Positions 2,443 to 64,000 of a stretch of 64,000 nucleotides of DNA are shown here, piece by piece; the first letter of the stretch is position 1, and every line of letters starts with the position of its first letter. The notes below the pieces were generated by a model. The model was not told the DNA's origin, searched no databases, and was given only the letters and a program-made list of their open reading frames with translations. The position numbers and the translations under genes were made by a program. Source of the DNA: Orbicella franksi (lineage: Eukaryota); contig OZ116707.1 of NCBI GenBank assembly GCA_964199315.1, positions 30,504,001 through 30,568,000 of the forward strand, read 5' to 3'.

Positions 2443-5400
2443 CGATCAAGTGATGTGTACGTTAAGTGGGTTATTTTTGCTTTCTGCATTTCTGAAGAGA
2501 AAAATATAGAAACAGATAACTCAAATAAATTTTGTGCTTATAGATTGCTCATTTATTAAAATAAGCTATTACTGTTCTTTGTCCATAGGTAATCTTTGAA
2601 GGAGTCACAGGCACAAGCTATACAGGAGACATTGCAATTGACGATGTAGAAACCGTTGATGGTACCTGTCCCCTCCCAGGTAGACCAATGATTCAATGTC
2701 AATCATGCTTGATCATTCACACTTGTGTTACACCAGTATGTTATTGTTTCACTGCTTGCATCAATTTTACCACCTAGGCTCATTTTAATGAAAGCACAGA
2801 TATCTCTATGCACCTCCATGCATTTCCATGCATCTCCATGCATATTGAAGGGTGCACGAGCATTACACAGTCTACCTTCTCGCAATGGACATCCCTGTAA
2901 TGTGGACGCCTCTTTATTACTGACACTTTCCTTTGGTCTGACAAAAAGACCTTAAATTCTCTACTAAAACCCACCCACTAAATCTCCATCCCAGAGAACT
3001 AATTGTATTATTTTCTAATTTCCACACATGTGTCTTTGATAAATTAAAGTGAAAGTCCATCGGAAATGTTGAGGTAGAAGTATGAAACTAAAACATGGGA
3101 ATGCGTGGGAAGAAGAACTCTTTATTAGTCATGACATTATATGATAATTATTTCAGTCACCTTTGATGTTATCAATTACCAGAGTGATACATTGACTTCA
3201 TTTGTCTGGCAGGTGATTGTGATTTTGAGAATGGATTGTGCACTTGGGTTAACTCACCGAATATTTTGGAAGACGAGTTTGATTGGACAAGGGGTAGTGG
3301 TTCAACACCAAGTAATTTTACAGGACCACCAACTGATCACACAACAGGCACAACGAAAGGTTGGTACTTTTTCATATATTTTTTTCTTTCTCCTTTCGTT
3401 ACATCTCTTTTTGATTTCTTCCTGCGAAGTGCAGTGTATGTTGTCAAGAAGATTCTAGCACTGGCCAGCCTACTTTGGCTTTGGTGTTACGTTAAAATGG
3501 TAACTAATCTCTAATAAGTACTGGGTGTATCTTTCACCTGCAGTTTGAATGGATAATAATTATATGAAGTAAATATTTGGATTTAACAGGTTTTCGTAAC
3601 ACTTTCAAAGCCAAAATCAAATCAAGCATTGGTGTTCACTTGCTATTGTCTTGTTCATATTGGAAAGTTAGGAGTTTAGTCAAGCCATTGTCACTACGGT
3701 TGATTTATGTTATTTATAATCATAACAACTTCATCTCTTTTTGTTTCCACAGGAAACTACATGTTTATTGAGACATCATACCCAAGGAAGTTCCGTGACC
3801 GTGCAAGACTAGAAAGTGAAGTCTTCGCTCCAACTCCCAGCAGTGGAAGATGTATGTCATTTTGGTATCACATGCAAGGAGGTCACATTGGGTCCCTGTC
3901 AGTGTACATGAGAGTGTATGGACAATCAGAGACAAAGTTATGGTCTGTCTCTCTTGATCAGGGAAATAAGTGGAACTCTGCAGTAGTGCCAATTCTCAGT
4001 GGTAATCGCTTCTATCAGGTAAGCTAGCTATAGTAGAGTAGAAAGCGATATGAACGTCAGACATAAACTGTACAAAACTTCAAAAATTAGTGTGAGTGCA
4101 GTTTACGATTTACAAAATTCTCTAAAATTTGCATGAGCTTTTGGCAAGTTGGATTTGAGAATTTTCAAATTTCATATCTATTGTAAATCCTTAATTGTTC
4201 CAACTTGCTGCAGTGTGATTTGTACTGCAGTGCAAAGAAAAAAATGCACTGGAAAAGAAATCATGGTCAATGATTCCATTACCGCAATGTTAGGTTTCAG
4301 AAGAATTTATTCCTTGTCGCCAAGCATTGCTTTCTCTGTAATTTAGCGCAAAACATAGATTATGTGAGGTTTTATCTTGTTTTTATTAAGCAAACTGTTT
4401 TGTATCCCATTCAAGGTGTGCATAAACTGTTTTAAATATGTTCTTTTTATTGTAGATCATTTTTGAAGGGACTCGTGGATCATCGTACCAAGGCGACATT
4501 GCTATTGACGACATTTCATTCACGGCAACTGTTGGTAAATGCCTGTTGTCCCCATCTAAGGCAACACCATTCGACTGCAACTTTGAGAGTGGTTTATGTT
4601 CCTGGACTCAGGACAGGACTGACCAGTTTGACTGGACAAGACACAGAGGTTCTACTGGTAGTGTTCTAACCGGTCCTAGCATTGATCACACATCAGGCAC
4701 ACGTTAGTATAACATTTGAAATGTATAGATGATATTAGATGATAAATTGCAGTCATACCTGTATTGAGCAGACTCCATTAAGTGGATGGTAGCCAATTTC
4801 TACGTTGTTGGTCATTTTGATTGATACTTGTAATTAGATTATAACAGCAAATGTGCCTGCTACTGGAAAATTCAGATGAGTCTCATTTGACAAGATGCTC
4901 ACCACCATGAAAAGAAGGACTGACTTATCGGTAGCCATCTGTAAAGTTGTGACTTGCTTTCAACACTATGCCAGAGAAATTTGAAAACGCAGTTTTATTT
5001 CTACAGTTAGGCCTACTGTCCACACTAATCCGTCACAAAAACGGAGCTTTTCTGATCTAAAATGCCCTTCAAACTGGAGCTCTTGTCGATTTGAACTTGC
5101 ATCCAGTTGAAGGATTAATTTAGACACATATTCTGCTTGTACGGAATTTTGGGCTGAAAATGTAATCACTAAATTAATATATTGCTGATAAATGGTTGTT
5201 ATTTGTACAGTTCAAGGTTGGTATATATACATAGAGACATCTTTTCCAAGACGACCTAATGACACTGCTCGTGTCACCAGTCCAACAATAAAAGGCAATG
5301 GTTCCAGCAAAGCCATTCACTGTGTGTCATTCTGGTACCACATGTATGGTCCTCATGTTGATGTACTACGTCTATACAAGAAACAGGGCTCCTCCCTTGG

Positions 5401-53800: not shown

Positions 53801-56800
53801 TGCGTCAGTTGCTGGGTCAACGAAAACGATGGCCATGACCAAATGGATTGGATTATCGGACGCGGAGAAACTGCCAGTCTGGGTACTGGTCCCTCCTACG
53901 ATCACACCAATAAGAGCATATATGGACGATACCTGTACATTGATGCATCCAGCATTACCAGGCCCGGATGGAATCACGCTGATTTGGAGAGCAGGCTGCT
54001 TGTCGTGCAACGACGGTGTTACATGTCTTTCTGGTACCATATGTATGGCTCTGGGGTGGGTTCCCTGTGGATTGTGGCCTATGTGTATAATGATCCCAAA
54101 AATCTGGTTGGTAAGTTTCACTAGCACAAAATTTTTAAAGAAAACCGCATATGTCAAATAACTCTGTAGATGGATCGACTGAGGTTCCGACCTGACAGTA
54201 TGGAATTCCTTTTTTCTCTAGATCATAAACAAGTCAATCTATGGTACATGGGAGGTAACCGCGGTAATAAATGGCAGCCTGGAATGGTGAGCTTATTCAA
54301 TCCAGAAACAGCAAACAAGACATCCAAAATAGTGATCAGTGGAATTAGAGGAACGGACTTCAGTGGAGATATAGCAATTGACGACATCCAATTCCACAAT
54401 TGTGACTTTAAGGATGCTTTAACACCGTGCACAGAGAGGTTTCCCAAGTGTAATGATCAACCTTTCACCCGGCCAACACTGGGTACGTCTATAAATATGA
54501 TTTCACCCTGTTAGGATGTGTGCTGGTGAGACTGTCCAGTTATTTTGTGGAGATTTGTCAGTAGGTAAACTACCTCTTTCAACAAGAGCAAATCAGTGGA
54601 TCCCATATTAAACGAGCACGCCTTAAGGCAGCCAGAATTTTGTTCCTGAAATGTTCTTCCGCATAAGACTGCAAATAAGCGCCTAATGTCATGAAGAGGC
54701 CCCTTCTATTACGCTTCTGCTGGTACCTTTTAGCCATCCATGAGGACACTTCCACTTAATATTTCCTCTATTAAGCTGCCACCGGGAAGTTAGTGTACAT
54801 AGTGCGGCCTTGTTTCAAAAATCAAATAACCGATAGGTAGGAGAATCCAAATTAGAAGGCGAGTATTGATAAAGATGTTTTAACACACGTTCATCCTAAA
54901 GTGATACTGTTTTCACTAACCAAAGATAACTAGTGAAATCCTTATTTTCTGGCAGTAAATTGACGTGCCTAGCTTTCCTTTTGCTGATTTATTACATTAT
55001 AAGCGAGTACTAATCATTTTCCATGTACTAACCATGTCCAAAATTTGCATTTTTGAAACTGAAAAAGTAATCGTGCTCTCAATACAGGTCCATTGACTGG
55101 TAACTGCAATTTTGAACAAGGCAGCTGTCACTGGAATAACACAGCCGTAAGTGATATGCCGTGGTATCTAAGAGAGGGAGCAACAGGAAGTGCAAACACT
55201 GGTCCTGACATAGATCACACCACAGGCACCTCAAGCGGTAGGATGCACATTGTTATCGTTATCTAGCAATTGAATCTCTAAGACATGTTTTAAATGGAAA
55301 ACGAGAATGAGTAGTCAAATTGTTGTGTGGAACATCTCTTACGACTACTCGTTGGAATATGAACACGGCTATTTTCTACTTACAGCAGATGTTACGTTGT
55401 GTTACATTTAATTTTGTTTTTTTGTTATTTTTTGTGGGTTAGGATACTACATGCATATTGAAGCCAGTTACTACGTCAAAGGTTCCCTGGCTATCCTGGA
55501 GGGTCCTTACATGATGCCGACCAAAAATTGTAAAATGACATTCTACTACCACATGTTTGGTGGTGACTGCGGCTCACTGCTTGTCTACATCAACAGTGGT
55601 GATGACGTTCGGCTGGTATTCAATCGGACGGGTCCTCAGGGGAAAAACTGGTTGAAAGGAGACGTACAATTAACGAGCGACTATGCCTTCCGAGTTCACA
55701 TCACTGCTTCGCGAGGAAATAGTTACAAAGGCGACATAGCAATTGATGACATTTCATTTCAGGTAACACCACGCCAGAGGTCAGGGCCGGGTTGTTCAAA
55801 GCCCGATTACGTTAACCCAGGATTAGCCAGAATTTTGATTTCAGTTTTGTAACTTTTTGGTGAGGTGTTCTGTTTACATTGTTTGCCCTTCAGTTTTGAG
55901 CGGTAGTAATCTCAAACTACACCAAATATAAGAGGTGAAAAACATTTTTAAACGAGAAAAAAATAATACTTCAGTTAACGTTTAATCCTGGGTTAACGTA
56001 AACCGACTTTCGAACAAGCCGACCCCTGGGCCCGTTTCTCGAAGGTCCTGAAGAGTTTTCGAGCCCGGAAAGTCGTAGCAAAATCTCAAGCCTTATGATT
56101 ACAGAGCTGTTTTATTTGCATATTCGTAACATGAACAGAGCTTTTCTTCATACAAGGAGTTTCAGGCGTATACACTTCTCTGTTTTTAGATACAGATTAT
56201 CTAAAAATGGCTTTGCGGGCCCGAAAAGTTTCCGGGGCTTTCGAGAAACGGGACCCTGGTCTATAGGCTAATGATTCAGCTATTTTGTGTTTTGCATCAT
56301 CACTTTTGTCAAGATCATTTCAATTTCATTCTGCTCAGATGATTTGGCTCGATGTCCGTTGAATACTGTGATTAGTTGATACACTGTGGCAAGTACAATC
56401 AACACCTTGTTTTAAACTATCTTGTAGGGTCAATGCTTATTCACAGATGACAATGCGTTGAGGTATGGCGACAAAGCTTTAAATACAGGCTGCTCGGATG
56501 GTGCACGAGAAGGTTTCTTCACTCACCCTACTGTAGCAGGCTGTAAGGGCTGGTGGCAAGGTCGCAAGAACCTTAGAGCCCAACCCTCCTCTGCTGGAGC
56601 CAAATGCGGAGATGACGTCGGAAACTTGGGTCGTTCCTGCAGTCAGCCAGCTGACTTGTGCCAGACAGGGTGGCATGTCTGTGGAACGTTTGGAGACGTT
56701 TTTGAAATTACCAACCGAGTAATTGTTTTGTTGCATTTATTTATAAGTTATAAGACATTACCCATCCTGAATCGAACGCCACAATGCTACTGATTTATTA

Positions 56801-59800
56801 AACTCACACTACTTCATTAGTAGTACTGAGTACGTTTTATCAATCTATAGCTATTTTCTGTGCCAAGTTTAAACTAATTCAGTTTCCAGTCATGCTGTTA
56901 TGCCTTACAGACATTTTCTTGTGCGGTTTTAATAAGTCTGTTAACTATGCTTTCCTGTTTCTTCTGGCGTGTACTTTTCTATTTATCCTCAGCTTTGTAT
57001 TAACATTTAATGATTCTCTGATAAATTAGATCAGATTAATAATACCGACGGCAAGTAAGTTCAGACGTGCAGTTGCGGGAAACTCAGGCAACTTCGATGT
57101 TACTATTCATTTAGTGATATGGCGTGGGATAAATTGGAGTGCTTTCAGTCAATCAATCAAATGATATTACTTACAGTGGCGTTATAGTATACAAAAGTTA
57201 AATGACGCAAATGTTCATTTATTAATTTTTGATTTTTAAGAATCCGCTATGAAAATTATACTCAAAAATTATTGATGTCTGTGCTAAAAAGACAATTTTG
57301 CTTCTTTTTTAACTGGATAAAGCTCGTAAAATTAATGTTATTATTGTTGTTCAGACAAATGGAATCGACTGCCAAAGGGCTGGCTATGGCCATTTCAGTG
57401 CCGGTATCAACCACTGTAAGACCAACAGTGGGGGAGGTGATGGCTGCAAACGAGTGGTGCCTAGAGTTGATTATGGGTGTGGCCAATACCACGAAAGTTG
57501 CTCAGAACCCCTGTGTTGTGGCGCTACTTGCCAAGGTCCAGACTCCTGTGATTCAGGTAACGCGAAATAATGCAACAATTGTGTCATGTTAGGTCTGTTG
57601 TAGATTACGCATTGCACTTAAATATTTCACGAGTCCCATTCTTGAGTACTCGTGAATATCACAGATGTTCATCGCACATTGCGTAAAGTAAAATAATCTA
57701 ATTAATCACTTTGTTCAAGTGTGGAAGTGTTTAACACTACTTTAGTACATTAATTGGCGGACAAGCAAACAAATATTGTAAATTGAACAGAAACTTGTTA
57801 AAANNNNNNNNNNNNNNNNNNNNNNNNNNNNNNNNNNNNNNNNNNNNNNNNNNNNNNNNNNNNNNNNNNNNNNNNNNNNNNNNNNNNNNNNNNNNNNNNN
57901 NNNNNNNNNNNNNNNNNNNNNNNNNNNNNNNNNNNNNNNNNNNNNNNNNNNNNNNNNNNNNNNNNNNNNNNNNNNNNNNNNNNNNNNNNNNNNNNNNNNN
58001 NNNNNNNNNNNNNNNNNNNNNNNNNNNNNNNNNNNNNNNNNNNNNNNNNNNNNNNNNNNNNNNNNNNNNNNNNNNNNNNNNNNNNNNNNNNNNNNNNNNN
58101 NNNNNNNNNNNNNNNNNNNNNNNNNNNNNNNNNNNNNNNNNNNNNNNNNNNNNNNNNNNNNNNNNNNNNNNNNNNNAATTTCAGAGTAGCTTGACCAGCT
58201 AATATTTCCGAGCAACAAAATATTTGACAACGAAAAATTAAAATAGAAATTGTTATTTACATGTTTACAATTGACTTATGTTAACTAATTATAAAATTGT
58301 CATTTACATGTTTGATGAATTGGTTTTACTGATGTGCTTTTTGAAGTCTGAGAAGTTACATAACCTTATGAAATTGGGTAGAGAATTCCATTTTTTTGTT
58401 GCCAGATAAGTAAAGGAGTGGAGACCAAAAGTTGTAGTTTTAGGTTTGGGCATTTCCAGTATATAGTTTCCACGCATGTTGTATGAAGTAGAACGGAACG
58501 AGAACATGTTTCTCATATAGGCCGGATAGCTAGTGAAAAATAGACTTTTGTACAAGGTAGTAAGGAATTTACAGATGCGTTGATCATGAAGTTGGAGACA
58601 GTTTACCCTGTCTAGCAGCACATTATAAGGCGATTCAAAATCGCTTAGAATGAATCTCAGAATCCTTTTGTTAAGAGCTTCTATTTTGTCCCTGTTGTTT
58701 GCACTGCAAAAGTGCCAAACTGTTGAGCAATAATCAAAATGAGGGAGTATGTAGGCCTTATACAGTTTCACTAAAATGTCTTTGGAAATAAGGTTTCTGA
58801 ACCTAAGCATTACATTAAACTGGTTGTTGACTTTTTTGCAAATAAGAGAGATGTAATTGTGAAAATTTAAATTGTTATCAATGTTCATTCCCAAAATGTC
58901 AATTGAGTCCTTTGTAGGAAACGAGAAGGTGTGTTCCGATTTTCCCAGGATCAAAGCCTGATGTTTGCTTTCATTGGCCAACATTCCATTTTGCCGGTAC
59001 CACCGGTTTGCTGTCTCGACTGCGTTACGCATGCGCCCATCTAGCGCAACAGGATCACTGTCCGATGAATATATTTGGTGATCGTCTGCATAAGCATTTA
59101 ACTTAACATCCCCGCAAAACAAGAAAATGTCATTTATGAAAATATTGAAAAACATGGGACCGAGGACGCTTCCCTGAGGCACGCCTCGTCTTGCATGTAG
59201 CCACTCTGAAAAAGTATCCCCTATCTTGACCCTCTGATTCCTTGAGGAAAGGTAGTCCTTAATCAGGGCACAACTTGCCTGGTCCAATCCGTAGGCTTTG
59301 AGCTTCGCAAGAAGAAGAGAGTGTTGGATTACATCAAACGCCTTTGACAAGTCCATAGATACAACTGCCACAGTGTCCCCTTGATCTCTCATCCTTCTCC
59401 ATTCCTCCGTCATGCATAGCAGGGAAGTTTCACAGCTGTGAAATTTCCTATAAGAGCTGATATAGTCCGATAGAATCAAGCTATGGAAATCACCAAGTTG
59501 CGGTGCCAGGAGTCTTTCAAATATATTATTTAGCGCAGGAAGTACAGTAACCGGCCTGTAATTTGCTGACCAGTTGGCTATTTACTCCGGATCACAAATC
59601 CAGCGCCCTTAACCACTAGGCCACGCTGCCTCCCCGTGTATTCAAGTGTCCAAGACGTGTGCCTTGAATACTCTCGGATTCTACTCAGCTCGTTTAGTTC
59701 TTACTATTTTGAGTAGTTTTTTTGCTTATTTAAGTTTAATTTGTTTTTTGCTATGTGATATTCTATGTATTAAGCAAAATAAAATGGTTGTTGTTGTTGA

Positions 59801-62800
59801 TTCTATGGCATCACCGTTGCATATTCGAGGCTAGAATAATCTAGGAAATTTTGTGTTTGGCGCAGTGATTGACATTACAGTGTTTTTTTGCCAATTAATC
59901 GCTGTGTCCTTCCCAGGTGTGTTCAAGGGAATGACTCGCTACACTGCTGCTGCTGGCAGTCTGGAAGGTTGTTCATTCATGTCAGCTGGTAATGCCGGTG
60001 GGATCATGTGCTGCAAAGATGACAGTACTACCCCCACCTTCCCACCAACATCTGTACCTACTGGCGGGGCGTGTGACTTTGAAGGAGGCATGTGCAATTG
60101 GATTGTTAACCAGTTAGCACCGGGAAAGTTTACTCGTCGCAGAGGAGAGACGCCGAGCCGAAACACTGGTCCACGTTACGACAACACCAAACAAGATTCA
60201 ACAGGTAAACTGCTGACACATTCATTCATTCGTTTAGTTCTGAGGGGACGGGGAAAGGGGGGATACCAGACTGAAAGGGGAGTCGAGATGGGGGTTAAAA
60301 GGGCGCTTTTTTCGATATGGAAGTATTTCCTACTGCAATCACACCTGCTGTCGTCATTTTAATGACATTTTCTGATCATTCCCAACTGCTTGAATGGAAT
60401 TTCTCACAGTAGCACAAATCGTATGGCTACTTAAGTCTTTCTCACCCAACTATTCATAGTCAAAGAGAACATTTACTTGATTTTTACCAATTGCTTATCT
60501 TTCTGTTTGTTTCCTTTAGGGTATTACCTGTATATGGATGCAACAAATTTAAATCCCAAAGACACAGCGGAAGTGTCATATCACTTTTCGGACGTGTCAC
60601 AGTCGTACTGTCAGATCAACTTCTTCTATTTTATGTATGGCGCTGGTCTGGGTGTTTTACGTTTGATAGTAAAGCCAAAAGGTGGACAAAGCGAAGAGGT
60701 ATTGTATAGTTGTTTTATTTACATACATGTAGGTTCAGTTGAGTGTGTTACTATAGTTCTGTCTTGTCCAAGACGGACTGTGGAGTGTGGAGTGTTGTAA
60801 ATTACTACAAGATTGAAGTTTCTTGCTAAACCGGGACAGCCATCACGGGTGATGCCTCTCACTAACTATGGGGCTCTCCTTGGTTTCCCTTACCATCCAT
60901 TGCCATTTCAGTGACCCTCCTTCTCTTTCGTTAGGTTTGGAAGGTTGCTGGAAATCAGGGTGATGGCTGGATTAGGGGTGTGCACAACTTCAGCGATCTT
61001 ATCAAGAACAAGACGTCTTTTACAGTCACCTTTGAGGCAGAACGTGGCCCGACCGATGAGAGCGATATTGCCATCGACGACATCACATTTACACCATGTA
61101 CCCATGGTAAGTCTAATCCATACTTCTCTGGGAATACGAAAACGTATTTTGAAAGCTGGAAAGGTTCGCCAGTCATTGTAGAAATTATAGAGTGAGATCA
61201 AATGAAAGGGCAATTTAAAAGTGCTTTCCATTTTAATTTCTTAGTGAACACAGGTCAGTGTAGGCGAGACCAGTTCCGATGCAGAAGTGGTGAATGCATC
61301 AAATCAAGCTTCGTTTGTGACCGTTTCCCAGATTGTTTAGATCATTCAGATGAAGGAGCAAACGCCAACTGCCGTAAGTATTCTATTCCTTAAAATGCTG
61401 TGTACTTTGTGGTGTGCAGTTCATAGCATGAGCAGGTCACTGAAAAACATGATGTGATTGGCATTAAACGTTACACGTGATTTGTTATCACTCATTTCAA
61501 ATTTGTCAAACCTTAGCATAAACTTTTGCTCCCGAGGTACAGCACAGTTGGTCTCCTTTTGAATTAAATATTTTCGATAAATAAGCACAAAGGAAGCTAC
61601 ACACTTATTTTTTGTCTGTGGAACTCCCGGGTTTACTGAAGGGCGTGAAGTTCGCGTAACTGTTCTGCCAAACTTCAATTTGTTGGCAAATCATGCAACG
61701 ACCGCAGCATTGTACAGAAGTCCAAGTATTTTTTACAGTTGATGTTCTTGCCTAATACTTTATTTATTTGAATTCGCAGCGAACCGAGATTGTGGTAATC
61801 TCCAGATATACTGTCCAAAGAATGATAAATGTCTGAACAAGTCTTTGCAGTGCGATGGCAGGAAAGACTGTGATGACTGGAGCGATGAGGCACATTGTGG
61901 TAAGCGGAATGCATGTGACACCCTTCACACAGCTCTACCTTTTACGCACTTTTCATCAACAGTGACAAATTTTCAGTTTTCCTCAGAAATTATTCAGTTG
62001 TGAATATATATGTGTAAATCATTGTAATAGACAGGATCGCTTAGGGCCACGAGAAAAACCTTTCGTATTTTTCATTTGATAAGACCATTTTCGAGTTGCC
62101 TTTTGCCTCCGTGCCAAGACGAGTCTTCGAACGAAAATATTCAAACAATTTCATTTTCATGCAAATCAAACTCATTTTCATATGAAACATTTTACACGAG
62201 GACTCGTTTTGAAACAGAGGCAAGGGGTAGTGCGGAAATGTGGTGTGATAGCCGGCAGGAATCAACTACTCACACACTGAGGAGAAATGTTACATGTAGA
62301 TCTATGTTTGTCAGAACGTGGTGGACACATGATGTTTAAAGAGAGCAAGGATTCAAGAACTGACATTATAACATAACTAAAGCAAAGCGCGCGCTCTGAT
62401 TGGTTAATTTAGCGTCTACTATTTGCCCATGGGTGTACGCTGCTGACGTGTGTGCTAATGTTTACAAAGCAAATCTTTTGACAGACATTGTTTCCAAAGT
62501 AATGGCCGACGTCCTTCTGCCAGAAATGCGAAATTGTCTTCATAGTTGTCTGGAGATGAAACTTTATCGAGTTACTGGTGTGCAGTCGGTTGTCATGAAT
62601 GAATTTTCGCGCGGTTGTTTTCTCTTGTCATGCAAGACTACACGAACATTTTTTTGTGATGTAGCTCAATGAAAGGACTTCTATAGTTCCAATGTCTCAA
62701 TGTTATGTTATAAAACAAATGGTAAACGCCATAGCGTGCACTATTGAGTTATGGATGCACGCGGGAGGTTGCTAAGCACGAAAGAAGCTCTAGCTTCTTG

Positions 62801-63663
62801 AGTACTTAGCAAACCTCCCAAGTGCATCCATAACTCAATAGTGCACGCTATGGCGTTTACCATTTGTTAATTAATAGTTTGTGATATTTACTTCATCTCC
62901 AGCATGTACTCAGGGATATTGTGTCAATGGAAAGTGCCAGTTAGACAACCAGGGACGCCCAGACTGTGTGTAAGTGTCGACAACTAGTGCACATACCTGT
63001 AAGTTTTGGGGTTTTCTAAGCTGTGTATCACTTTCATGGAGCGTCGTGCAACGTCATATTGGAGGGGCGGATTCGCGCCACTGTTAATGTTTTTAGATAC
63101 ATATTTTTAAAGAAATAATAAAACTTTAAATTATCCACTTTATTGCTGGAACAGTGAATATTACTGGGGAAGCAGTGATAGCGCAGTGGTGAAAGTACTC
63201 GTTTCTCATCGAACTGGGTTGAGTTTGTTGTTGGTTCTCGCCCTGCTCCAAGAGTATTTCTCTGGATTCTCGTCTCCCACCGAAGAGGGTTCATTTTTTT
63301 TTTTGTTGGTTTTCGCCTTGCTCCGGTTTTCCTGCCTCCTGAAAAACCAACATTTTCAAATTCCAATTCGAGCAGCAGAGTTAGGGCTGATGTGGCTTCC
63401 TCTCTAAACATTGTAATTAAGTCATTTATTTGCTGCAAAGAATATAGTTTTATCGAACTTACCGGAGTTACCGTTTTCGTTGTTTCCTAGTTGCAACGCT
63501 AATTACGCTGGTACGAGATGTCAAAATTGCACCAATTGTAAGTGTCCTGCCGATCAGATTCAGTGTAAAGTGGGTCAGTGGTTCTGCGCAAAGAAAGCCG
63601 ACATCTGTAATGGAATAGTGAAGTGTGGTCTCAGTCCAGATGACTTTGTAAAACTTTGCAATG
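1631..63663 (+). CDS. MALRD1-like: Giant multi-exon gene, partial at both ends: MAM and LDL-receptor class A domain-containing protein (32 MAM, 18 LDLa-like, 2 trefoil, 1 EGF, 1 unassigned Cys-rich domain); 93 exons, about 6,560 aa in window
   Basis: Repeated MAM motifs (CxFExxxCxW, TGPxxDHT, GxYx[19 protein letters not shown]) and LDLa motifs (CDFxxDCxDxSDE) lie in AG/GT-bounded exons. Exon phases chain without a break and sum to 19,683 nt. No start codon, signal peptide, TM segment or stop codon is in the window. Confidence 0.95.
2122..2302. other. Assembly gap (N run), intronic
   Basis: N run. Confidence 1.
2303..2445 (+). repeat. Tetranucleotide microsatellite (TCAA/TCAG/TCAC)n beside an assembly gap
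   Basis: Directly visible. Confidence 0.95.
2589..2679 (+). CDS. exon 2, MAM1 end
   Basis: AG/GT, 91 nt; [19 protein letters not shown]. Confidence 0.9.
3213..3359 (+). CDS. exon 3, MAM2 start
   Basis: AG/GT; [20 protein letters not shown]. Confidence 0.92.
3753..4018 (+). CDS. exon 4, MAM2 core
   Basis: AG/GT; [16 protein letters not shown]. Confidence 0.92.
4456..4702 (+). CDS. exon 5, MAM2 end / MAM3 start
   Basis: AG/GT; [24 protein letters not shown]. Confidence 0.9.
5211..5485 (+). CDS. exon 6, MAM3 core
   Basis: AG/GT; [17 protein letters not shown]. Confidence 0.9.
5560..5745 (+). mobile_element. tRNA-derived SINE (degenerate)
   Basis: A box TGGCTTAGTCGG at 5567; B-box-like GCTTCAAATCC at 5611. 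Confidence 0.6.
5789..5879 (+). CDS. exon 7, MAM3 end
   Basis: AG/GT, 91 nt; [12 protein letters not shown]. Confidence 0.9.
6249..6392 (+). CDS. exon 8, MAM4 start
   Basis: AG/GT; [19 protein letters not shown]. Confidence 0.9.
6963..7222 (+). CDS. exon 9, MAM4 core
   Basis: AG/GT; [13 protein letters not shown]. Confidence 0.92.
7243..7388. mobile_element. MITE with TAGCCTG..CAGGCTA ends and 9-bp TSD
   Basis: TSD GCTGTGGAG at 7234-7242 and 7389-7397. Confidence 0.8.
7968..8193 (+). CDS. exon 10, MAM4 end / MAM5 start
   Basis: AG/GT; [22 protein letters not shown]. Confidence 0.9.
9009..9274 (+). CDS. exon 11, MAM5 core
   Basis: AG/GT; [15 protein letters not shown]. Confidence 0.92.
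9303..9689. mobile_element. piggyBac-like MITE
   Basis: TIR CCCTTTGAATACCA / TGGTATTCAAAGGG flanked by TTAA on both sides. Confidence 0.85.
9886..10063 (+). CDS. exon 12, MAM5 end + Thr/Pro-rich linker
   Basis: AG/GT; [20 protein letters not shown]. Confidence 0.9.
10514..10660 (+). CDS. exon 13, MAM6 start
   Basis: AG/GT; [21 protein letters not shown]. Confidence 0.9.
10931..11094 (+). CDS. exon 14, MAM6 core a
   Basis: AG/GT; [18 protein letters not shown]. Confidence 0.9.
11507..11644. mobile_element. Hairpin element, copy 1
   Basis: Internal palindrome plus asymmetric tail; flanked by 14-bp direct repeat AACATAGAACGAAT. Confidence 0.75.
11922..12026 (+). CDS. exon 15, MAM6 core b
   Basis: AG/GT; [16 protein letters not shown]. 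Confidence 0.87.
12058..12155. mobile_element. Palindromic MITE TAGCCTGCGAAC..GTTCGCAGGCTA
   Basis: 12-bp TIR; flanks GGGAACCTA / GGGAACCTG (9-bp TSD with one mismatch). Confidence 0.8.
12457..12547 (+). CDS. exon 16, MAM6 end
   Basis: AG/GT, 91 nt; [12 protein letters not shown]. Confidence 0.9.
13118..13279 (+). CDS. exon 17, MAM7 start
   Basis: AG/GT; [15 protein letters not shown]. Confidence 0.9.
13572..13791. mobile_element. MITE with CAGGGCTCGAAAAAA TIRs (hAT-like ends)
   Basis: 15-bp perfect TIR; internal repeated GGGCAAG motifs; only 5 bp (TTGCT) of flank duplicated. Confidence 0.7.
13955..14214 (+). CDS. exon 18, MAM7 core
   Basis: AG/GT; [16 protein letters not shown]. Confidence 0.92.
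14336..14426 (+). CDS. exon 19, MAM7 end
   Basis: AG/GT, 91 nt; [12 protein letters not shown]. Confidence 0.9.
14540..14763. mobile_element. Kolobok-like MITE
   Basis: TTAA-GGGCCCTAGTCAGCC..GGCTGACTAGGGGCCC-GTAA (degenerate TTAA). Confidence 0.6.
15005..15145 (+). CDS. exon 20, MAM8 start
   Basis: AG/GT; [18 protein letters not shown]. Confidence 0.9.
15230..15400 (-). mobile_element. Partial tRNA-derived SINE
   Basis: B box GGGTTCGAATCC on the minus strand at 15358-15369 followed by a non-tRNA body. Confidence 0.55.
15821..16089 (+). CDS. exon 21, MAM8 core
   Basis: AG/GT; [16 protein letters not shown]. Confidence 0.92.
16168..16450 (+). CDS. exon 22, MAM8 end, Pro/Thr linker, MAM9 start
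   Basis: AG/GT; [23 protein letters not shown]. Confidence 0.92.
16750..16933 (+). CDS. exon 23, MAM9 core a
   Basis: AG/GT; [17 protein letters not shown]. Confidence 0.9.
17334..17641 (+). CDS. exon 24, MAM9 end / MAM10 start
   Basis: AG/GT; [22 protein letters not shown]. Confidence 0.9.
17767..18026 (+). CDS. exon 25, MAM10 core
   Basis: AG/GT; [16 protein letters not shown]. Confidence 0.92.
18127..18217 (+). CDS. exon 26, MAM10 end
   Basis: AG/GT, 91 nt; [12 protein letters not shown]. Confidence 0.9.
18341..18502 (+). CDS. exon 27, MAM11 start
   Basis: AG/GT; [21 protein letters not shown]. Confidence 0.9.
18809..19011 (+). CDS. exon 28, MAM11 core
   Basis: AG/GT; [16 protein letters not shown]. 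Confidence 0.9.
19124..19431 (+). CDS. exon 29, MAM11 end, trefoil 1, start of trefoil 2
   Basis: AG/GT; [34 protein letters not shown]. Confidence 0.92.
19965..20266 (+). CDS. exon 30, trefoil 2, Pro/Thr linker, MAM12 start
   Basis: AG/GT; [40 protein letters not shown]. Confidence 0.92.
20769..21040 (+). CDS. exon 31, MAM12 core
   Basis: AG/GT; [15 protein letters not shown]. Confidence 0.92.
21494..21584 (+). CDS. exon 32, MAM12 end
   Basis: AG/GT, 91 nt; [12 protein letters not shown]. Confidence 0.9.
21752..21899. mobile_element. Hairpin element, copy 2 (opposite orientation to copy 1)
   Basis: 40-bp tail identical in reverse complement to the copy at 11507-11644; flanked by 9-bp direct repeat ATTTTAGAA. 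Confidence 0.75.
22076..22216 (+). CDS. exon 33, MAM13 start
   Basis: AG/GT; [18 protein letters not shown]. Confidence 0.9.
22389..22728. mobile_element. MITE with CAGGGTTCGTAC-type ends (hAT-like)
   Basis: Right end GTACGAACCCTG; degenerate left end CATGGTTCGTTC; internal GTCATGGAA repeats; CTCTAG on both flanks. Confidence 0.65.
23020..23285 (+). CDS. exon 34, MAM13 core
   Basis: AG/GT; [16 protein letters not shown]. Confidence 0.92.
23790..24021 (+). CDS. exon 35, MAM13 end / MAM14 start
   Basis: AG/GT; [16 protein letters not shown]. Confidence 0.92.
24253..24351. repeat. Palindromic repeat core
   Basis: 23-bp arms GTTTGACTACATTTCCAAACACC / GGTGTTTGGAAATGTGGTCAAAC (one mismatch). 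Confidence 0.7.
24477..24754 (+). CDS. exon 36, MAM14 core
   Basis: AG/GT; [16 protein letters not shown]. Confidence 0.92.
25480..25564 (+). CDS. exon 37, MAM14 end
   Basis: AG/GT; [19 protein letters not shown]. Confidence 0.9.
26185..26337 (+). CDS. exon 38, LDLa1 + MAM15 start
   Basis: AG/GT; [25 protein letters not shown]. Confidence 0.9.
26596..26700 (+). CDS. exon 39, MAM15
   Basis: AG/GT; [13 protein letters not shown]. Confidence 0.9.
27166..27378 (+). CDS. exon 40, MAM15 core
   Basis: AG/GT; [17 protein letters not shown]. Confidence 0.9.
28001..28277 (+). CDS. exon 41, MAM15 end + LDLa2
   Basis: AG/GT; [23 protein letters not shown]. Confidence 0.92.
28371..28504 (+). CDS. exon 42, MAM16 start
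   Basis: AG/GT; [18 protein letters not shown]. Confidence 0.9.
28669..28940 (+). CDS. exon 43, MAM16 core
   Basis: AG/GT; [16 protein letters not shown]. Confidence 0.92.
29100..29306 (-). mobile_element. tRNA-derived SINE
   Basis: A box TGGCCGAGTGG; anticodon arm CCGGA-CTTGAAA-TCCGG; degenerate B box GGTCAAGTCC; non-tRNA 3' body. Confidence 0.8.
29420..29669 (+). CDS. exon 44, MAM16 end + LDLa3
   Basis: AG/GT; [24 protein letters not shown]. Confidence 0.92.
30042..30179 (+). CDS. exon 45, MAM17 start
   Basis: AG/GT; [18 protein letters not shown]. Confidence 0.9.
30490..30750 (+). CDS. exon 46, MAM17 core (probable GC donor)
   Basis: AG acceptor; donor AAG/GCAAGT; [12 protein letters not shown]. 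Confidence 0.8.
31116..31270 (+). CDS. exon 47, MAM17 end + LDLa4 first half
   Basis: AG/GT; [23 protein letters not shown]. Confidence 0.82.
31293..31678. mobile_element. hAT-type MITE
   Basis: TIR CCCG(n)ACTCCCATATGGA; perfect 8-bp TSD ATTCTAGT. Confidence 0.9.
32030..32225 (+). CDS. exon 48, LDLa4 second half + MAM18 start
   Basis: AG/GT; [22 protein letters not shown]. Confidence 0.92.
32850..33068 (+). CDS. exon 49, MAM18 core
   Basis: AG/GT; [17 protein letters not shown]. Confidence 0.92.
33095..33340 (+). mobile_element. Degenerate Penelope-like 3' end with hammerhead-like motif
   Basis: Decayed [11 protein letters not shown]-type C-terminal coding remnant followed by CTGAAGA..GAAACATGTC at 33270-33303. 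Confidence 0.55.
33440..33659 (+). CDS. exon 50, MAM18 end + LDLa5 start
   Basis: AG/GT; GEQGDIW..GCNSGQY. Confidence 0.9.
33987..34219 (+). CDS. exon 51, LDLa5 + MAM19 start
   Basis: AG/GT; [22 protein letters not shown]. Confidence 0.92.
34344..34415 (+). repeat. 27-bp tandem repeat, about 2.7 copies
   Basis: AAAATATGATGTGTAGAACATGATGTG. Confidence 0.9.
34827..35086 (+). CDS. exon 52, MAM19 core
   Basis: AG/GT; [14 protein letters not shown]. Confidence 0.92.
35111..35720. mobile_element. Penelope-like element 3' remnant with an inverted 5' segment
   Basis: Minus strand: [16 protein letters not shown] (GIY-YIG region). Plus strand: [36 protein letters not shown]. 31-bp perfect inverted repeat at 35111-35141 / 35385-35415. 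Confidence 0.85.
35721..35880 (+). repeat. Tri/hexanucleotide microsatellite (TAA, TGATAA, TGACAG)
   Basis: Directly visible; follows the Penelope-like 3' end. Confidence 0.95.
35917..36143 (+). CDS. exon 53, MAM19 end + LDLa6
   Basis: AG/GT; [20 protein letters not shown]. Confidence 0.92.
36326..36459 (+). CDS. exon 54, MAM20 start
   Basis: AG/GT; [16 protein letters not shown]. Confidence 0.9.
36602..36861 (+). CDS. exon 55, MAM20 core
   Basis: AG/GT; [16 protein letters not shown]. Confidence 0.92.
37459..37558 (+). CDS. exon 56, MAM20 end
   Basis: AG/GT; [19 protein letters not shown]. Confidence 0.9.
37731..38220. mobile_element. Tc1/mariner-type MITE
   Basis: TA-CAGCCGAACCTCC..GGAGGTTCGACTG-TA; internal GTGGTCGCTTA repeats. 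Confidence 0.8.
38524..38799 (+). CDS. exon 57, 4-Cys LDLa7 + MAM21 start
   Basis: AG/GT; [28 protein letters not shown]. Confidence 0.9.
38914..39105 (+). CDS. exon 58, MAM21 core
   Basis: AG/GT; [15 protein letters not shown]. Confidence 0.9.
39162..39247. mobile_element. Short MITE TAGGCTCGATT..AATCGAGCCT abutting another GC-rich repeat
   Basis: 10-bp terminal inverted repeat; GC-rich relative to the intron. Confidence 0.55.
39498..39684 (+). CDS. exon 59, MAM21 end + LDLa8 start
   Basis: AG/GT; [19 protein letters not shown]. Confidence 0.9.
40490..40725 (+). CDS. exon 60, LDLa8 + MAM22 start
   Basis: AG/GT; [21 protein letters not shown]. Confidence 0.92.
40967..41104. mobile_element. 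Harbinger-like MITE (degenerate)
   Basis: Ends CCCCAGTTGTTCGA / TCGAACAACCGGAGCC; internal GGATAG/TATCC repeats. Confidence 0.55.
41347..41613 (+). CDS. exon 61, MAM22 core
   Basis: AG/GT; [14 protein letters not shown]. Confidence 0.92.
41954..42205 (+). CDS. exon 62, MAM22 end + LDLa9
   Basis: AG/GT; [23 protein letters not shown]. Confidence 0.92.
42387..42604 (+). CDS. exon 63, MAM23 start
   Basis: AG/GT; [13 protein letters not shown]. Confidence 0.9.
42797..42989 (+). CDS. exon 64, MAM23 core
   Basis: AG/GT; [16 protein letters not shown]. Confidence 0.9.
43307..43492 (+). CDS. exon 65, MAM23 end + LDLa10
   Basis: AG/GT; [23 protein letters not shown]. Confidence 0.92.
43753..43842 (+). 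CDS. exon 66, MAM24 start
   Basis: AG/GT; [15 protein letters not shown]. Confidence 0.9.
43887..44056. other. Assembly gap (N run) within a hexanucleotide microsatellite, intronic
   Basis: N run flanked by GACAAT and CAGTAA repeats. Confidence 1.
44180..44508 (+). CDS. exon 67, MAM24 core
   Basis: AG/GT; [14 protein letters not shown]. Confidence 0.92.
44635..44853 (+). CDS. exon 68, MAM24 end + LDLa11 start
   Basis: AG/GT; [22 protein letters not shown]. Confidence 0.9.
45150..45354 (+). CDS. exon 69, LDLa11 end + MAM25 start (RKRR motif)
   Basis: AG/GT; [27 protein letters not shown]. Confidence 0.9.
45557..45825 (+). CDS. exon 70, MAM25 core
   Basis: AG/GT; [16 protein letters not shown]. 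Confidence 0.9.
46268..46386 (+). CDS. exon 71, MAM25 end + LDLa12 start
   Basis: AG/GT; [14 protein letters not shown]. Confidence 0.9.
46861..47105 (+). CDS. exon 72, LDLa12 + MAM26 start
   Basis: AG/GT; [21 protein letters not shown]. Confidence 0.92.
47574..47951 (+). CDS. exon 73, MAM26 core and end
   Basis: AG/GT; [22 protein letters not shown]. Confidence 0.92.
48052..48356 (+). CDS. exon 74, LDLa13 + MAM27 start
   Basis: AG/GT; [23 protein letters not shown]. Confidence 0.9.
48543..48746 (+). CDS. exon 75, MAM27 core
   Basis: AG/GT; [15 protein letters not shown]. Confidence 0.9.
49464..49720 (+). repeat. Imperfect tandem duplication (about 135 + 122 bp)
   Basis: Two units starting CAAACGCTACAGAACGCACCAAACGCT at 49464 and 49599. 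Confidence 0.85.
50112..50276 (+). CDS. exon 76, MAM27 end + LDLa14 start
   Basis: AG/GT; [19 protein letters not shown]. Confidence 0.9.
50710..50920 (+). CDS. exon 77, LDLa14 + MAM28 start
   Basis: AG/GT; [17 protein letters not shown]. Confidence 0.9.
51509..51745 (+). CDS. exon 78, MAM28 core
   Basis: AG/GT; [21 protein letters not shown]. Confidence 0.9.
52135..52283 (+). CDS. exon 79, MAM28 end
   Basis: AG/GT; [18 protein letters not shown]. Confidence 0.9.
52824..53154 (+). CDS. exon 80, LDLa15 + MAM29 start
   Basis: AG/GT; [21 protein letters not shown]. Confidence 0.9.
53385..54110 (+). CDS. exon 81 (726 nt), MAM29 core/end + most of MAM30
   Basis: AG/GT; [29 protein letters not shown]. 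Confidence 0.92.
54222..54482 (+). CDS. exon 82, MAM30 end + Cys-containing linker
   Basis: AG/GT; [23 protein letters not shown]. Confidence 0.88.
55088..55237 (+). CDS. exon 83, MAM31 start
   Basis: AG/GT; [20 protein letters not shown]. Confidence 0.9.
55443..55762 (+). CDS. exon 84, MAM31 core/end
   Basis: AG/GT; [20 protein letters not shown]. Confidence 0.92.
55785..56255. mobile_element. Two abutting Harbinger-like MITEs (55785-56025 and 56029-56255)
   Basis: TIRs GGCCGGGTTGTTCAAA and GGCCCGTTTCTCGAA; separated and flanked by CAG/CTG/CTG trinucleotides. Confidence 0.7.
56428..56718 (+). CDS. exon 85, unassigned Cys-rich domain, part 1
   Basis: AG/GT, phase 0-0; [28 protein letters not shown]. 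Confidence 0.87.
57355..57556 (+). CDS. exon 86, unassigned Cys-rich domain, part 2
   Basis: AG/GT, phase 0-1, in a frame not shown in the ORF track; [38 protein letters not shown]. Confidence 0.85.
57804..58176. other. Assembly gap (N run), intronic
   Basis: N run. Confidence 1.
58304..59570 (-). mobile_element. 5'-truncated non-LTR retrotransposon (CR1/L2-type) reverse transcriptase; ORF 58304-59479 runs to its stop codon, frameshifted upstream
   Basis: RT motifs [19 protein letters not shown] and YADD; C-terminal [13 protein letters not shown] and WNSLP; NYRPVTVLP motif just upstream in a shifted frame; no endonuclease domain. Confidence 0.92.
59565..59635 (-). mobile_element. Internally deleted tRNA-derived SINE head fused to the LINE 5' end
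   Basis: GGGGAGGCAGCGTGGCCTAGTGGTTAAGGGCGCTGG matches the SINE at 29100-29306; B box deleted. Confidence 0.75.
59636..59799 (+). mobile_element. Probable LINE 3' UTR with (GTT)n tail, opposite strand to the RT
   Basis: AT-rich stretch ending AATAAAATG(GTT)4G; 3'-end style typical of L2/CR1 elements (inference). Confidence 0.5.
59917..60204 (+). CDS. exon 87, Cys-rich domain end + MAM32 start
   Basis: AG/GT; [28 protein letters not shown]. Confidence 0.88.
60520..60698 (+). CDS. exon 88, MAM32 core
   Basis: AG/GT; [13 protein letters not shown]. Confidence 0.9.
60935..61106 (+). CDS. exon 89, MAM32 end
   Basis: AG/GT; [19 protein letters not shown]. Confidence 0.9.
61254..61373 (+). CDS. 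exon 90, LDLa16
   Basis: AG/GT; [27 protein letters not shown]. Confidence 0.92.
61780..61899 (+). CDS. exon 91, LDLa17
   Basis: AG/GT; [30 protein letters not shown]. Confidence 0.92.
62080..62240. mobile_element. Degenerate MITE
   Basis: Inverted arms TTGCCTCCGTGCCAAGACGAGTC / GACTCGTTTTGAAACAGAGGCAA. Confidence 0.5.
62714..62868. repeat. Long palindrome (47-bp perfect arms)
   Basis: AACAAATGGTAAACGCC..GGATGCAC and its exact reverse complement, plus further near-perfect inner pairing. Confidence 0.9.
62903..62969 (+). CDS. exon 92, EGF-like domain first part
   Basis: AG/GT; [21 protein letters not shown]. Confidence 0.88.
63166..63420 (+). mobile_element. tRNA-derived SINE (rearranged)
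   Basis: A-box-like TAGCGCAGTGG; body GGGTTGAGTTTGTTGTTGGTTCTCG..CCGGTTTTCC..AAAAACCAAC; B box missing. Confidence 0.6.
63491..63663 (+). CDS. exon 93, EGF end + degenerate LDLa-like repeat
   Basis: AG/GT; [26 protein letters not shown]. Confidence 0.85.
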
Positions 63664-64000
63664 GTGAGAATTTCATGGATTGAAATACTTTTAAATTGCA
63701 TATGAAGCCAGAAAAGTTCACTGGATACTTCGACATTTATCACTTTTAAGACGTGATTCCAAAGGTTAAAACGTGTTAGAAGGAAAGCCGTTTTATACTG
63801 TCTGGAAATTGTGCTGTTTTTTTTCTTACAGTTAGTAACAGGTTTTCAAATGGCGCAACCAAAATGCGACATGAAAACGGCATTGATTTACAGGAAATGT
63901 CCAATCCGTGATCACCTGACAATATATCAACTCAGTTACAATATTATAGGGTCTTGTAGCGGTTTTCAAGCTGACTCTGTGCTCTGGTGAACTTTCCAGT

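What the first reader, a model, noticed from the sequence alone, without database searches (positions are those of the whole stretch)
56428..60020. Unassigned 18-cysteine domain (about 180 aa) embedded between MAM31 and MAM32
Seen: three phase-compatible exons (56428-56718, 57355-57556, 59917 onward) encode [94 protein letters not shown]. It has 18 Cys and is not MAM, LDLa, EGF or trefoil. The middle exon is in a frame absent from the ORF track, so it is easily missed. Inference, from memory and unverified: the GCxDGxREGF / DLCxxGWHVC / GxxCC signature resembles secreted Cys-rich modules of some invertebrates and myxobacteria. That would make it a candidate unnamed domain family, possibly with a history of horizontal transfer, and the most likely ligand-specific module of this giant protein.
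Basis: partly seen in the sequence, partly recalled or inferred. Interest (0 to 1): 0.75.

Follow-up and report, generated by a model that had tools for sequence, protein, structure and literature searches.

The report
Unnamed 18-cysteine domain, corals and myxobacteria
Three spliced coral exons encode a real, expressed, single-copy 180-residue cysteine-rich domain from a large family with no name in any database I could search; it occurs only in a giant receptor of corals and sponges and in secreted proteins of myxobacteria, so it points to an old gene exchange between bacteria and early animals.

Summary
RNA contigs from four coral metatranscriptome studies join 55762|56428, 56718|57355 and 57556|59917 at GT..AG borders. 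The assembly gap (57804-58176) therefore lies in an intron and the mRNA skips it.

The spliced peptide has 18 cysteines after the last MAM cysteine. It aligns end to end, with no break at either exon junction, to more than 120 domain copies in which all 18 Cys columns are conserved. No member matches Pfam (E<=1), NCBIfam or any solved structure by sequence.

Members occur in:
- Myxococcota: 62 of 301 sampled genomes, against 1 of 201 in a control phylum. More than 1,500 protein clusters are all called 'hypothetical protein'.
- Giant MAM/LDLa transmembrane proteins of Sycon, Oscarella and Corticium sponges, and of corals.

The coral genome holds one copy. Corals and sponges share the flanking MAM domains, a phase-0 intron position, and a tail with two NPxY motifs. 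The domain was therefore already in this receptor before sponges and cnidarians split.

Most likely it is an extracellular ligand-recognition module. Binding is inferred, not shown. An interdomain transfer is very likely, but its direction is unresolved.

The parts
55443..55762 (+). Last exon of the upstream MAM domain. It ends in phase 0 with ...[10 protein letters not shown].
   Evidence: Pfam MAM E=7e-22, profile positions 44-152. Spliced to 56428 in four RNA runs.
56428..56718 (+). Exon 1, 97 codons. The first ~17 residues are the MAM tail (GQC) and a linker. From G21/C22 (56488) onward it is the N-terminal half of the module, with motifs [31 protein letters not shown] and 6 of the 18 Cys.
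   Evidence: phmmer gave 335 hits. The family profile matches this exon at E=1e-22 in the own-genome scan.
56719..57354 (+). Intron 1, phase 0. Its position is shared with other corals, a homoscleromorph sponge and other unnamed animal contigs.
   Evidence: GT..AG joint in four runs. Gene-call fragments from other animals leave the alignment at the same column and read on with Val (GTN).
57355..57556 (+). Exon 2, 67 codons plus 1 base. It is the cysteine-dense middle of the module (..[29 protein letters not shown], 9 Cys).
   Evidence: Family profile E=5e-6.
57557..59916 (+). Intron 2, phase 1. It holds the assembly gap 57804-58176 and a retrotransposon fragment.
   Evidence: mRNA contigs join 57556 to 59917 directly in four runs.
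58304..59479 (-). 5'-truncated reverse-transcriptase ORF (391 aa) of a retroelement inside intron 2. It is not part of the gene product.
   Evidence: ORF list. Pfam RVT_1 E=2e-24, profile positions 37-205.
59917..60020 (+). First part of exon 3, the C-terminal strand region of the module (..[18 protein letters not shown], last 3 Cys).
   Evidence: It aligns to the family's GVLCC end.
60021..60204 (+). Rest of exon 3: a Pro/Thr linker and the start of the next MAM domain ([10 protein letters not shown]..).
   Evidence: Weak MAM hit at profile positions 1-40. The following exons hit MAM, then two LDLa repeats.

Best explanation
The three exons encode one folded extracellular domain of about 180 residues, held by nine predicted disulfides. 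It belongs to a large family that no database I could query has named.

In the coral it is a single-copy insert between two MAM domains in the membrane-proximal part of a giant type-I receptor. That receptor has MAM and LDLa arrays, one transmembrane helix, and a cytoplasmic tail with NPVY and NPLY motifs. The same domain sits at the same place in the same kind of receptor in calcareous and homoscleromorph sponges.

Outside animals it is found almost only in Myxococcota. There it occurs either as the sole globular part of tethered lipoproteins or at the C-terminal end of secreted proteases, sulfatases, VWD proteins and adhesins.

Most likely mechanism (inferred): it is a lectin-like recognition module. 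It would present a fixed binding surface built from the invariant Asp/Arg/Glu/Phe of GCxDGxREGF and the Asp/Trp of PADxCxxGW. In bacteria this would aim enzymes or adhesins at a target. In the animal receptor it would capture a particular ligand for NPxY-driven endocytosis.

Shown here: splicing, expression, family membership, taxonomic distribution, domain architectures, a confident fold model.
Inferred: ligand binding, the binding site, endocytic function, and that the family passed between bacteria and stem animals.
For: - The gene is real and spliced, with the gap in an intron.
- The spliced peptide aligns over residues ~19-199 to 121 domain copies, and all 18 Cys columns are conserved. 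Ten Cys are invariant. The others are lost in pairs (C60/C71, C118/C146, C151/C156), as expected for disulfides.
- The coral copy keeps every invariant non-Cys residue.
- No member matches Pfam, NCBIfam or PDB sequences.
- Bacterial range: 62 of 301 Myxococcota genomes against 1 of 201 in a control phylum. A pattern scan of 185,579 species returned almost only Myxococcota. There are 1,546 clusters, all called 'hypothetical protein'.
- Standalone bacterial members: 65 of 115 start with a lipobox-like signal and 42 more with a hydrophobic signal.
- Bacterial fusions: Peptidase_S8+VWD, Peptidase_M4+VWD, Sulfatase, Laminin_G_3+FGE-sulfatase, Stig1, Lectin_C+MopE+fibrinogen_C, cadherin-like+OmpA. 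The module is usually at the very C-terminus. This is the usual pattern for a targeting or binding module.
- Animal hosts: Oscarella, Corticium and Sycon 'MAM and LDL-receptor class A domain-containing protein 2-like' proteins, each with a signal peptide, a TM helix and NPxY tails.
- The coral gene continues past the window into a TM exon and exons encoding GVGNPVYDSF and ANPLYQDPY.
- The coral genome holds one copy.
- Two AlphaFold models from divergent members are confident: pLDDT 87.4 / pTM 0.85 and pLDDT 95.0 / pTM 0.92. Both give top-50 structural lists made almost only of C-type-lectin-like folds.
Against: - No binding, ligand or localisation data exist for any member.
- Profile-profile comparison with 30 coral C-type lectin domains scores no better than a reversed control.
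- The conserved Asp/Arg/Glu/Asp/Trp/His set could equally be structural or catalytic.
- I could not fold the coral sequence itself. A spliced peptide has no reference, so the models are of homologs that are 47% identical or less.
- I could not read model coordinates, so the proposed binding site is a guess from conservation alone.
Confidence: 0.6

Rival explanations
1. The domain is a rigid, disulfide-locked spacer or architectural element that sets the geometry of the membrane-proximal region or of a tethered lipoprotein. It has no ligand of its own.
For: It is very Cys-rich, with 9 disulfides in 180 residues. It sits at a fixed position 300-420 residues before the TM helix in sponges and coral. 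There is only one copy per coral receptor.
Against: Spacers rarely keep invariant charged and aromatic residues across bacteria and animals at ~45% identity. In many bacterial lipoproteins it is the only globular domain, behind a disordered linker. In enzymes it is a terminal add-on, not a linker.
Confidence: 0.15
2. The domain is an enzyme, for example a hydrolase or a redox/metal-dependent catalyst on a C-type-lectin-like scaffold as in formylglycine-generating enzyme. The conserved Asp, Arg, Glu, Asp, Trp, His residues would form an active site.
For: There is an invariant polar set in two motifs. The ESM Atlas shape search lists an FGE-sulfatase cluster at TM 0.38. Some bacterial members stand alone as whole proteins.
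Against: There is no sequence or significant fold match to any enzyme family. It is repeatedly fused behind domains that are already catalytic (S8, M4, sulfatase, FGE-sulfatase). The TM 0.38 match is below the fold-level threshold.
Confidence: 0.1
3. It is a highly diverged member of an already named family (C-type lectin / Link module), so not a new family.
For: In two independent models, 48 of 50 and about 50 of 50 top VIA-align rows are CTLD-superfamily structures, and they cover both termini. Weak Foldseek rows are also snake-venom and NK-cell CTLDs.
Confidence: 0.1
4. The exons are bacterial contamination or a mis-assembly, not coral DNA.
For: The closest bacterial sequences are as similar to the coral peptide (44-46%) as the sponge ones are (45-50%).
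Against: The module is split by two spliceosomal GT..AG introns. It is spliced in phase to MAM exons on both sides in mRNA from four studies. It lies at 30.5 Mb on a 31-Mb contig. It shares an intron position with sponges. Intron 2 carries an animal retroelement fragment.
Confidence: 0.01

Closest known systems
C-type lectin-like domain superfamily (e.g. CLEC5A 2yhf, LYVE-1 Link module 8ox3, tunicate TC14 1byf)
   Same: It is the only fold class that recurs in structure searches of both models, with about 90-105 residues superposed and both chain ends included. Both are extracellular, disulfide-stabilised and typically ligand-binding. Both are used as appended recognition modules in animals and bacteria.
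[quoted passage not shown]
   Same: The host protein is of this type, a very long array of MAM and LDLa modules. NCBI names the sponge proteins carrying the module after these coral proteins.
   Different: The published descriptions I read list repeats and modification sites but no such Cys-rich module. I did not test whether the window's gene is the ortholog of either protein. From memory, MALRD1 is much shorter and has no comparable domain; this was not tested.
LDL-receptor-family endocytic receptors
   Same: The host protein has LDLa repeats, a single TM helix and a short tail with two NPxY motifs.
   Different: No YWTD propeller or EGF-precursor region was seen. MAM domains dominate. Endocytosis is inferred from the motifs only.
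Carbohydrate-binding modules and tip domains appended to secreted enzymes and fibres of bacteria (e.g. Bdellovibrio Bd2740 C-terminal domain, 8oks)

Membership tests
Unnamed 18-Cys family defined here (Myxococcota plus sponge/coral receptors) | End-to-end alignment of ~175-185 residues with significant E-value | tested here: met
   The spliced coral peptide aligns over residues ~19-199 to 121 copies, at domain E-values down to 1e-44 for full-length homologs. Exon 1 alone gives 49 hits at E<=1e-10 in 1.84 billion proteins.
Unnamed 18-Cys family defined here (Myxococcota plus sponge/coral receptors) | The 10 invariant Cys plus motifs GCxDGxREGF, PADxCxxGW.xC and the C-terminal G(V/I)(L/M)CC | tested here: met
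   All are present in the coral sequence: [29 protein letters not shown].
C-type lectin domain (Pfam Lectin_C, PF00059) | Match to the family profile | tested here: not met
   No hit in the coral exons at E<=10 or in any of 110 members at E<=1. hhalign against 30 coral CTLDs gives probability 0.2%, equal to the reversed control.
C-type lectin-like fold (superfamily level) | Significant structural superposition on solved CTLDs | tested here: inconclusive
C-type lectin-like fold (superfamily level) | Ca2+/sugar-binding signatures (EPN/QPD, WND) at equivalent positions | not testable with these tools
   No reliable residue-level alignment to CTLDs could be made, and model coordinates are not returned.
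MAM, LDLa, EGF, trefoil (the host protein's own module types) | Pfam profile match | tested here: not met
   No Pfam family matches exon 1 or exon 2 at E<=10. The only MAM hit lies in the part of exon 3 after the module.
Curated bacterial families (NCBIfam, including myxobacterial Cys-rich repeat models) | Match to any NCBIfam model | tested here: not met
   Six bacterial and two animal members gave no relevant family at E<=0.1.
LDL-receptor-type endocytic receptor (host protein) | LDLa repeats, a single TM helix, a cytoplasmic NPxY motif | tested here: met
   Two LDLa hits follow the next MAM domain. A TM exon and exons encoding NPVY and NPLY lie 4-7 kb past the window. The same tail occurs in Sycon and Oscarella. 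Endocytic function itself was not tested.

The most novel reading that the evidence does not exclude
A single ancient transfer from a myxobacterium-like donor gave stem animals a new disulfide-rich recognition fold. It was built into a giant MAM/LDLa/NPxY endocytic receptor before sponges and cnidarians diverged, was later lost (or changed beyond recognition) in most animals, and represents a fold class with no solved representative.
Probability: 0.35. Interest if true: 0.75.

Novelty: new variant of a known kind. Interest (0 to 1): 0.58.

Why it matters
It adds a sizeable, unannotated domain family to the list of extracellular modules. The family has more than 1,500 protein clusters, is found in about a fifth of sampled Myxococcota genomes, and sits in a conserved receptor of sponges and corals.

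It is a concrete, datable case of domain sharing between predatory soil and marine bacteria and the earliest animal lineages. The shared receptor architecture and the shared intron place the event before the sponge/cnidarian split.

It also marks the one non-repetitive module in a giant coral MAM/LDLa protein. NCBI names the sponge proteins that carry this module after the Acropora MAM/LDL-receptor proteins reported in the coral skeletal matrix; whether the window's gene is their ortholog was not tested. That makes it the obvious target for finding what this receptor binds.

The confident structure models match nothing solved, so an experimental structure would probably be informative.

Tried and rejected
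- Pfam on the three exon peptides, on 110 family members and on whole homologs found nothing for the module. NCBIfam found nothing. A PDB sequence search with the family profile found nothing.
- Foldseek against the PDB with both models gave no match below E=1.6.
- Foldseek against Swiss-Prot models gave nothing significant, only C-type lectins at E>2.
- A feature search of the ESM Atlas restricted to named clusters gave no usable hit.
- hhalign of the family against 30 C-type lectin domains from the same coral genome scored the same as a reversed control. I therefore do not file the module under Lectin_C.
- The search for related loci with the 110-sequence alignment failed because no conserved 7-10-column stretch was found. 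A 12-sequence bacterial alignment worked.
- Searches for giant named animal proteins with Oscarella and Sycon domain regions returned only Sycon. The coral's own annotated protein and other cnidarian proteins were not retrieved, probably because of the length window and the word filter. The animal range is therefore a lower bound.
- Gene neighbourhoods in Nannocystaceae show conserved tatA/B-like, tatC, rhomboid and sigma-54-activator genes around the lipoprotein gene. I read this as family-level synteny, not as a functional clue.
- Literature searches found no paper describing the module.
Homologs were folded instead.
- Contamination was considered and rejected.
Full report
**1. The observation**

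The upstream MAM exon ends in phase 0 at 55762. Exon 1 (56428-56718) has 97 codons. Exon 2 (57355-57556) has 67 codons plus one base. Exon 3 (from 59917) completes that codon and reads on into a Pro/Thr linker and the start of the next MAM domain.

The scan's program asked that the assembly gap at 57804-58176 be tested first. I laid contigs of four coral metatranscriptome runs from four studies on 55400-60300. In every run one contig covers 55442-55760, 56426-56718, 57355-57553 and 59914-60205 in a row. The joints are GT..AG with no letters between, and no joint skips any of the three exons. The gap is therefore inside intron 2 and the mature mRNA does not depend on it. I did not try to fill it. 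Intron 2 also holds a 5'-truncated reverse-transcriptase ORF on the minus strand.

The spliced peptide has 19 Cys up to CCKDD. The first closes the preceding MAM domain, leaving 18 in the module.

**2. What it is**

Neither exon 1 nor exon 2 matches any Pfam model even at E<=10.

A phmmer search of exon 1 alone against 1.84 billion representative proteins gave 335 hits at E<=1e-3 and 49 at E<=1e-10. I compared the whole spliced peptide with those proteins in a script. It aligns over residues ~19-199, straight across both exon junctions, to 121 domain copies. All 18 Cys columns are conserved.

The family consensus reads GCaDGxREGF..AGC..W..LR..CGdd..C..PADxCaxGWHvCG..C..f.aa.sHC..C..C..c.EPvCCG..C..C.dGvW..T..GC..GVLCC. 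Ten Cys are invariant. The others drop out together in pairs (C60/C71, C118/C146, C151/C156 in spliced numbering), which is the signature of disulfide partners. The continuous alignment across the exon 2/3 junction also argues against a hidden exon in the gap.

None of 110 members matches any Pfam family at E<=1. NCBIfam gives nothing. A PDB sequence search with the family profile gives nothing. A profile search of 5.8 billion proteins, limited to lengths of 110-350 aa, found 1,546 clusters at E<=1e-5. Every name given by a source is 'hypothetical protein', and no precomputed Pfam domain covers the module.

**3. Who has it**

Bacteria:
- A pattern scan of one genome for each of 185,579 species returned 127 confirmed loci, almost all labelled Myxococcota (Nannocystis, Enhygromyxa salina DSM 15201, Kofleriaceae, Polyangia, Bradymonadia).
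- With the family profile, 62 of 301 evenly drawn Myxococcota genomes have a match at E<=1e-5, often several.
- In the phylum of the one Planctomycetota-labelled hit, only that genome matched, 1 of 201.

Animals:
- Named members are 'MAM and LDL-receptor class A domain-containing protein 2-like' proteins of Oscarella lobularis (4,327 and 4,875 aa), Corticium candelabrum and Sycon ciliatum (5,142 aa, two copies).
- Unnamed members include MAM-flanked proteins from metagenomic and metatranscriptomic contigs and coral exon-1 fragments at 93, 78 and 73% identity.
- The coral genome itself has exactly one copy. The family profile hits only exon 1 and exon 2 of this locus in 497 Mb.

**4. Context in animals**

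The sponge proteins have a signal peptide, one TM helix near the C-terminus, and a tail with GNPVY and NPLY..DPY motifs. The module lies 300-420 residues before the TM helix, between MAM domains.

In the coral the module is followed by a MAM domain and two LDLa repeats inside the window. In the 10 kb past the window's end I found:
- a TM exon at about L085:4073-4161 (..VYIGVGVAAGIILIVVVLVVAYFVMKSKK, then GT);
- an exon encoding GVGNPVYDSF;
- an exon encoding ANPLYQDPY.

This is the same tail as in sponges. The whole receptor plan, including the module's place, is therefore shared by Calcarea, Homoscleromorpha and Scleractinia.

An intron is shared as well. Unspliced gene-call fragments from three corals, a Corticium-like contig (compare P0033 with the spliced NCBI model P0026) and three other animal contigs all leave the alignment at the column of the coral's exon 1/2 border, and all read on with Val, as a GTN donor would. 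In one unnamed animal the module is a single exon. The module was therefore already in this gene in the common ancestor of sponges and cnidarians.

A paper notes that MAM domains appear absent from demosponges (PMC6824150). This fits the sponge classes I found.

**5. Context in bacteria**

Of the 115 best standalone proteins, 65 start with a lipobox-like signal and 42 more with a hydrophobic signal. The module follows a low-complexity linker, and it ends the protein or is followed by a charged low-complexity tail.

In larger proteins the module is usually the last domain. It sits behind Peptidase_S8+VWD, Peptidase_M4+VWD, Sulfatase, Laminin_G_3 x3 + FGE-sulfatase, VWD alone or Stig1. It also occurs with Lectin_C+MopE+fibrinogen_C and with cadherin-like repeats plus OmpA. 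This is the behaviour of a mobile extracellular targeting or binding module.

**6. Fold**

I folded two members with family alignments. One was an animal copy 47% identical to the coral (pLDDT 87.4, pTM 0.85). The other was a bacterial copy from the most divergent subfamily (pLDDT 95.0, pTM 0.92).

- Foldseek finds no PDB match for either.
- AlphaFold DB clusters and the ESM Atlas return only unnamed family members at good scores.
- At the sequence-profile level there is no relation to 30 C-type lectin domains from the same genome.

I read this as a fold with no solved close relative and a faint, consistent C-type-lectin-like topology. It is a lead, not a membership.

**7. History**

In a maximum-likelihood tree of 96 domain copies the 11 animal copies form one side of a branch. 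Support is SH-aLRT 93 in the quick tree, 88/62 in the careful tree, and 84% of bootstrap trees. Coral plus Sycon copy a has 96/86 support. The animal group sits next to a 50-row bacterial subfamily, and both are separated by a 100/100 branch from a second, 35-row bacterial subfamily.

The root is unknown, so the direction of transfer is not shown. Vertical descent cannot explain one bacterial phylum plus a few animal lineages at ~45% identity with 18 shared Cys, so a transfer between domains of life is very likely. The greater depth, abundance and architectural variety in Myxococcota favour a bacterial donor. This is inference.

**8. Mechanism and verdict**

The best-supported reading is an extracellular recognition module. 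In myxobacteria it would tether or aim lipoproteins, hydrolases and adhesins. In the animal receptor it would supply one specific binding site next to the membrane, on a protein whose tail carries endocytosis motifs.

The invariant non-Cys residues are Asp, Arg, Glu and Phe of the first motif and Asp and Trp of PADxCxxGW. All are kept in the coral and are my candidate binding site. Nothing here tests binding.

Rivals are a purely structural spacer, an enzyme, or a very diverged C-type lectin domain. Contamination is excluded by the splicing data.

The family is unnamed in every library I could query, which makes this a new kind of extracellular module rather than a member of a known family. 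This stretch had been noted before only as the same finding in this scan.

Noticed in passing
L085 (G000:C10:30568001-30578000), about 4073-4161, 4525 and 6819: The giant gene continues past the window into a transmembrane exon and two exons encoding GVGNPVYDSF and ANPLYQDPY. This is the same two-NPxY cytoplasmic tail as in the Sycon and Oscarella giant MAM/LDLa proteins, so this looks like an ancient endocytic-type receptor shared by sponges and corals.
   Followed up: partly
window 56718/56719 (exon 1 donor): The phase-0 intron after ..EITNR sits at the same alignment column in three coral fragments, a Corticium-like contig and three other unnamed animal contigs. In another unnamed animal (L083/L084) the whole module is one exon.
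   Followed up: yes
window 57803 to about 59565-59568: Several low-depth contigs in the RNA runs join the last base before the assembly gap to about 59566, with 17-20 other letters between. These may be alleles without the retroelement insertion or other copies of a repeat. I did not pursue it, because it touches the gap.
   Followed up: no
window 58304-59479 (-): A 391-aa open frame with an RVT_1 match that starts at profile position 37. It is a 5'-truncated retroelement fragment inside intron 2.
   Followed up: yes
window 63417-63680 and L085:1837-2091: Two further Cys-rich open frames lie between the LDLa repeats and the TM exon. Neither has a Pfam hit at E<=0.01. They may be more unassigned membrane-proximal modules of the same protein. 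Their splicing was not checked.
   Followed up: no
AlphaFold DB clusters A0A210QQE7 (scallop), T1JH60 (centipede), A0A1S3HHK0 (Lingula): The N-terminal ~150-residue regions of bilaterian Ig-domain proteins match the model at Foldseek E 4e-5 to 6e-3 with 16-19% identity. They could be very distant bilaterian relatives of the fold. The sequences could not be fetched.
   Followed up: no
P0138 (119 aa) and many Myxococcota hits covering only profile positions 5-136: Shorter variants exist. One lacks the Cys-dense middle and keeps the N-terminal half plus the ..CC end. Many bacterial copies lack or have diverged in the last quarter. These might help to define the core fold or to root the tree.
   Followed up: no
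L010-L027 (Nannocystaceae loci): The standalone lipoprotein gene lies in conserved synteny, after tatA/B-like and tatC genes and before a rhomboid-domain gene and an FHA/sigma-54 activator gene.
   Followed up: partly
window 55638, 57462, 60117: All four RNA runs differ from the reference at these exon positions (A>G, T>C, G>A). 57462 is a synonymous third position (CCT to CCC). These are probably strain or population differences.
   Followed up: partly
G000, e.g. C8:29.8-30.2 Mb and C3:26.4-26.8 Mb: The coral genome holds at least 150 single-exon C-type lectin domain matches, many in dense tandem clusters.
   Followed up: no
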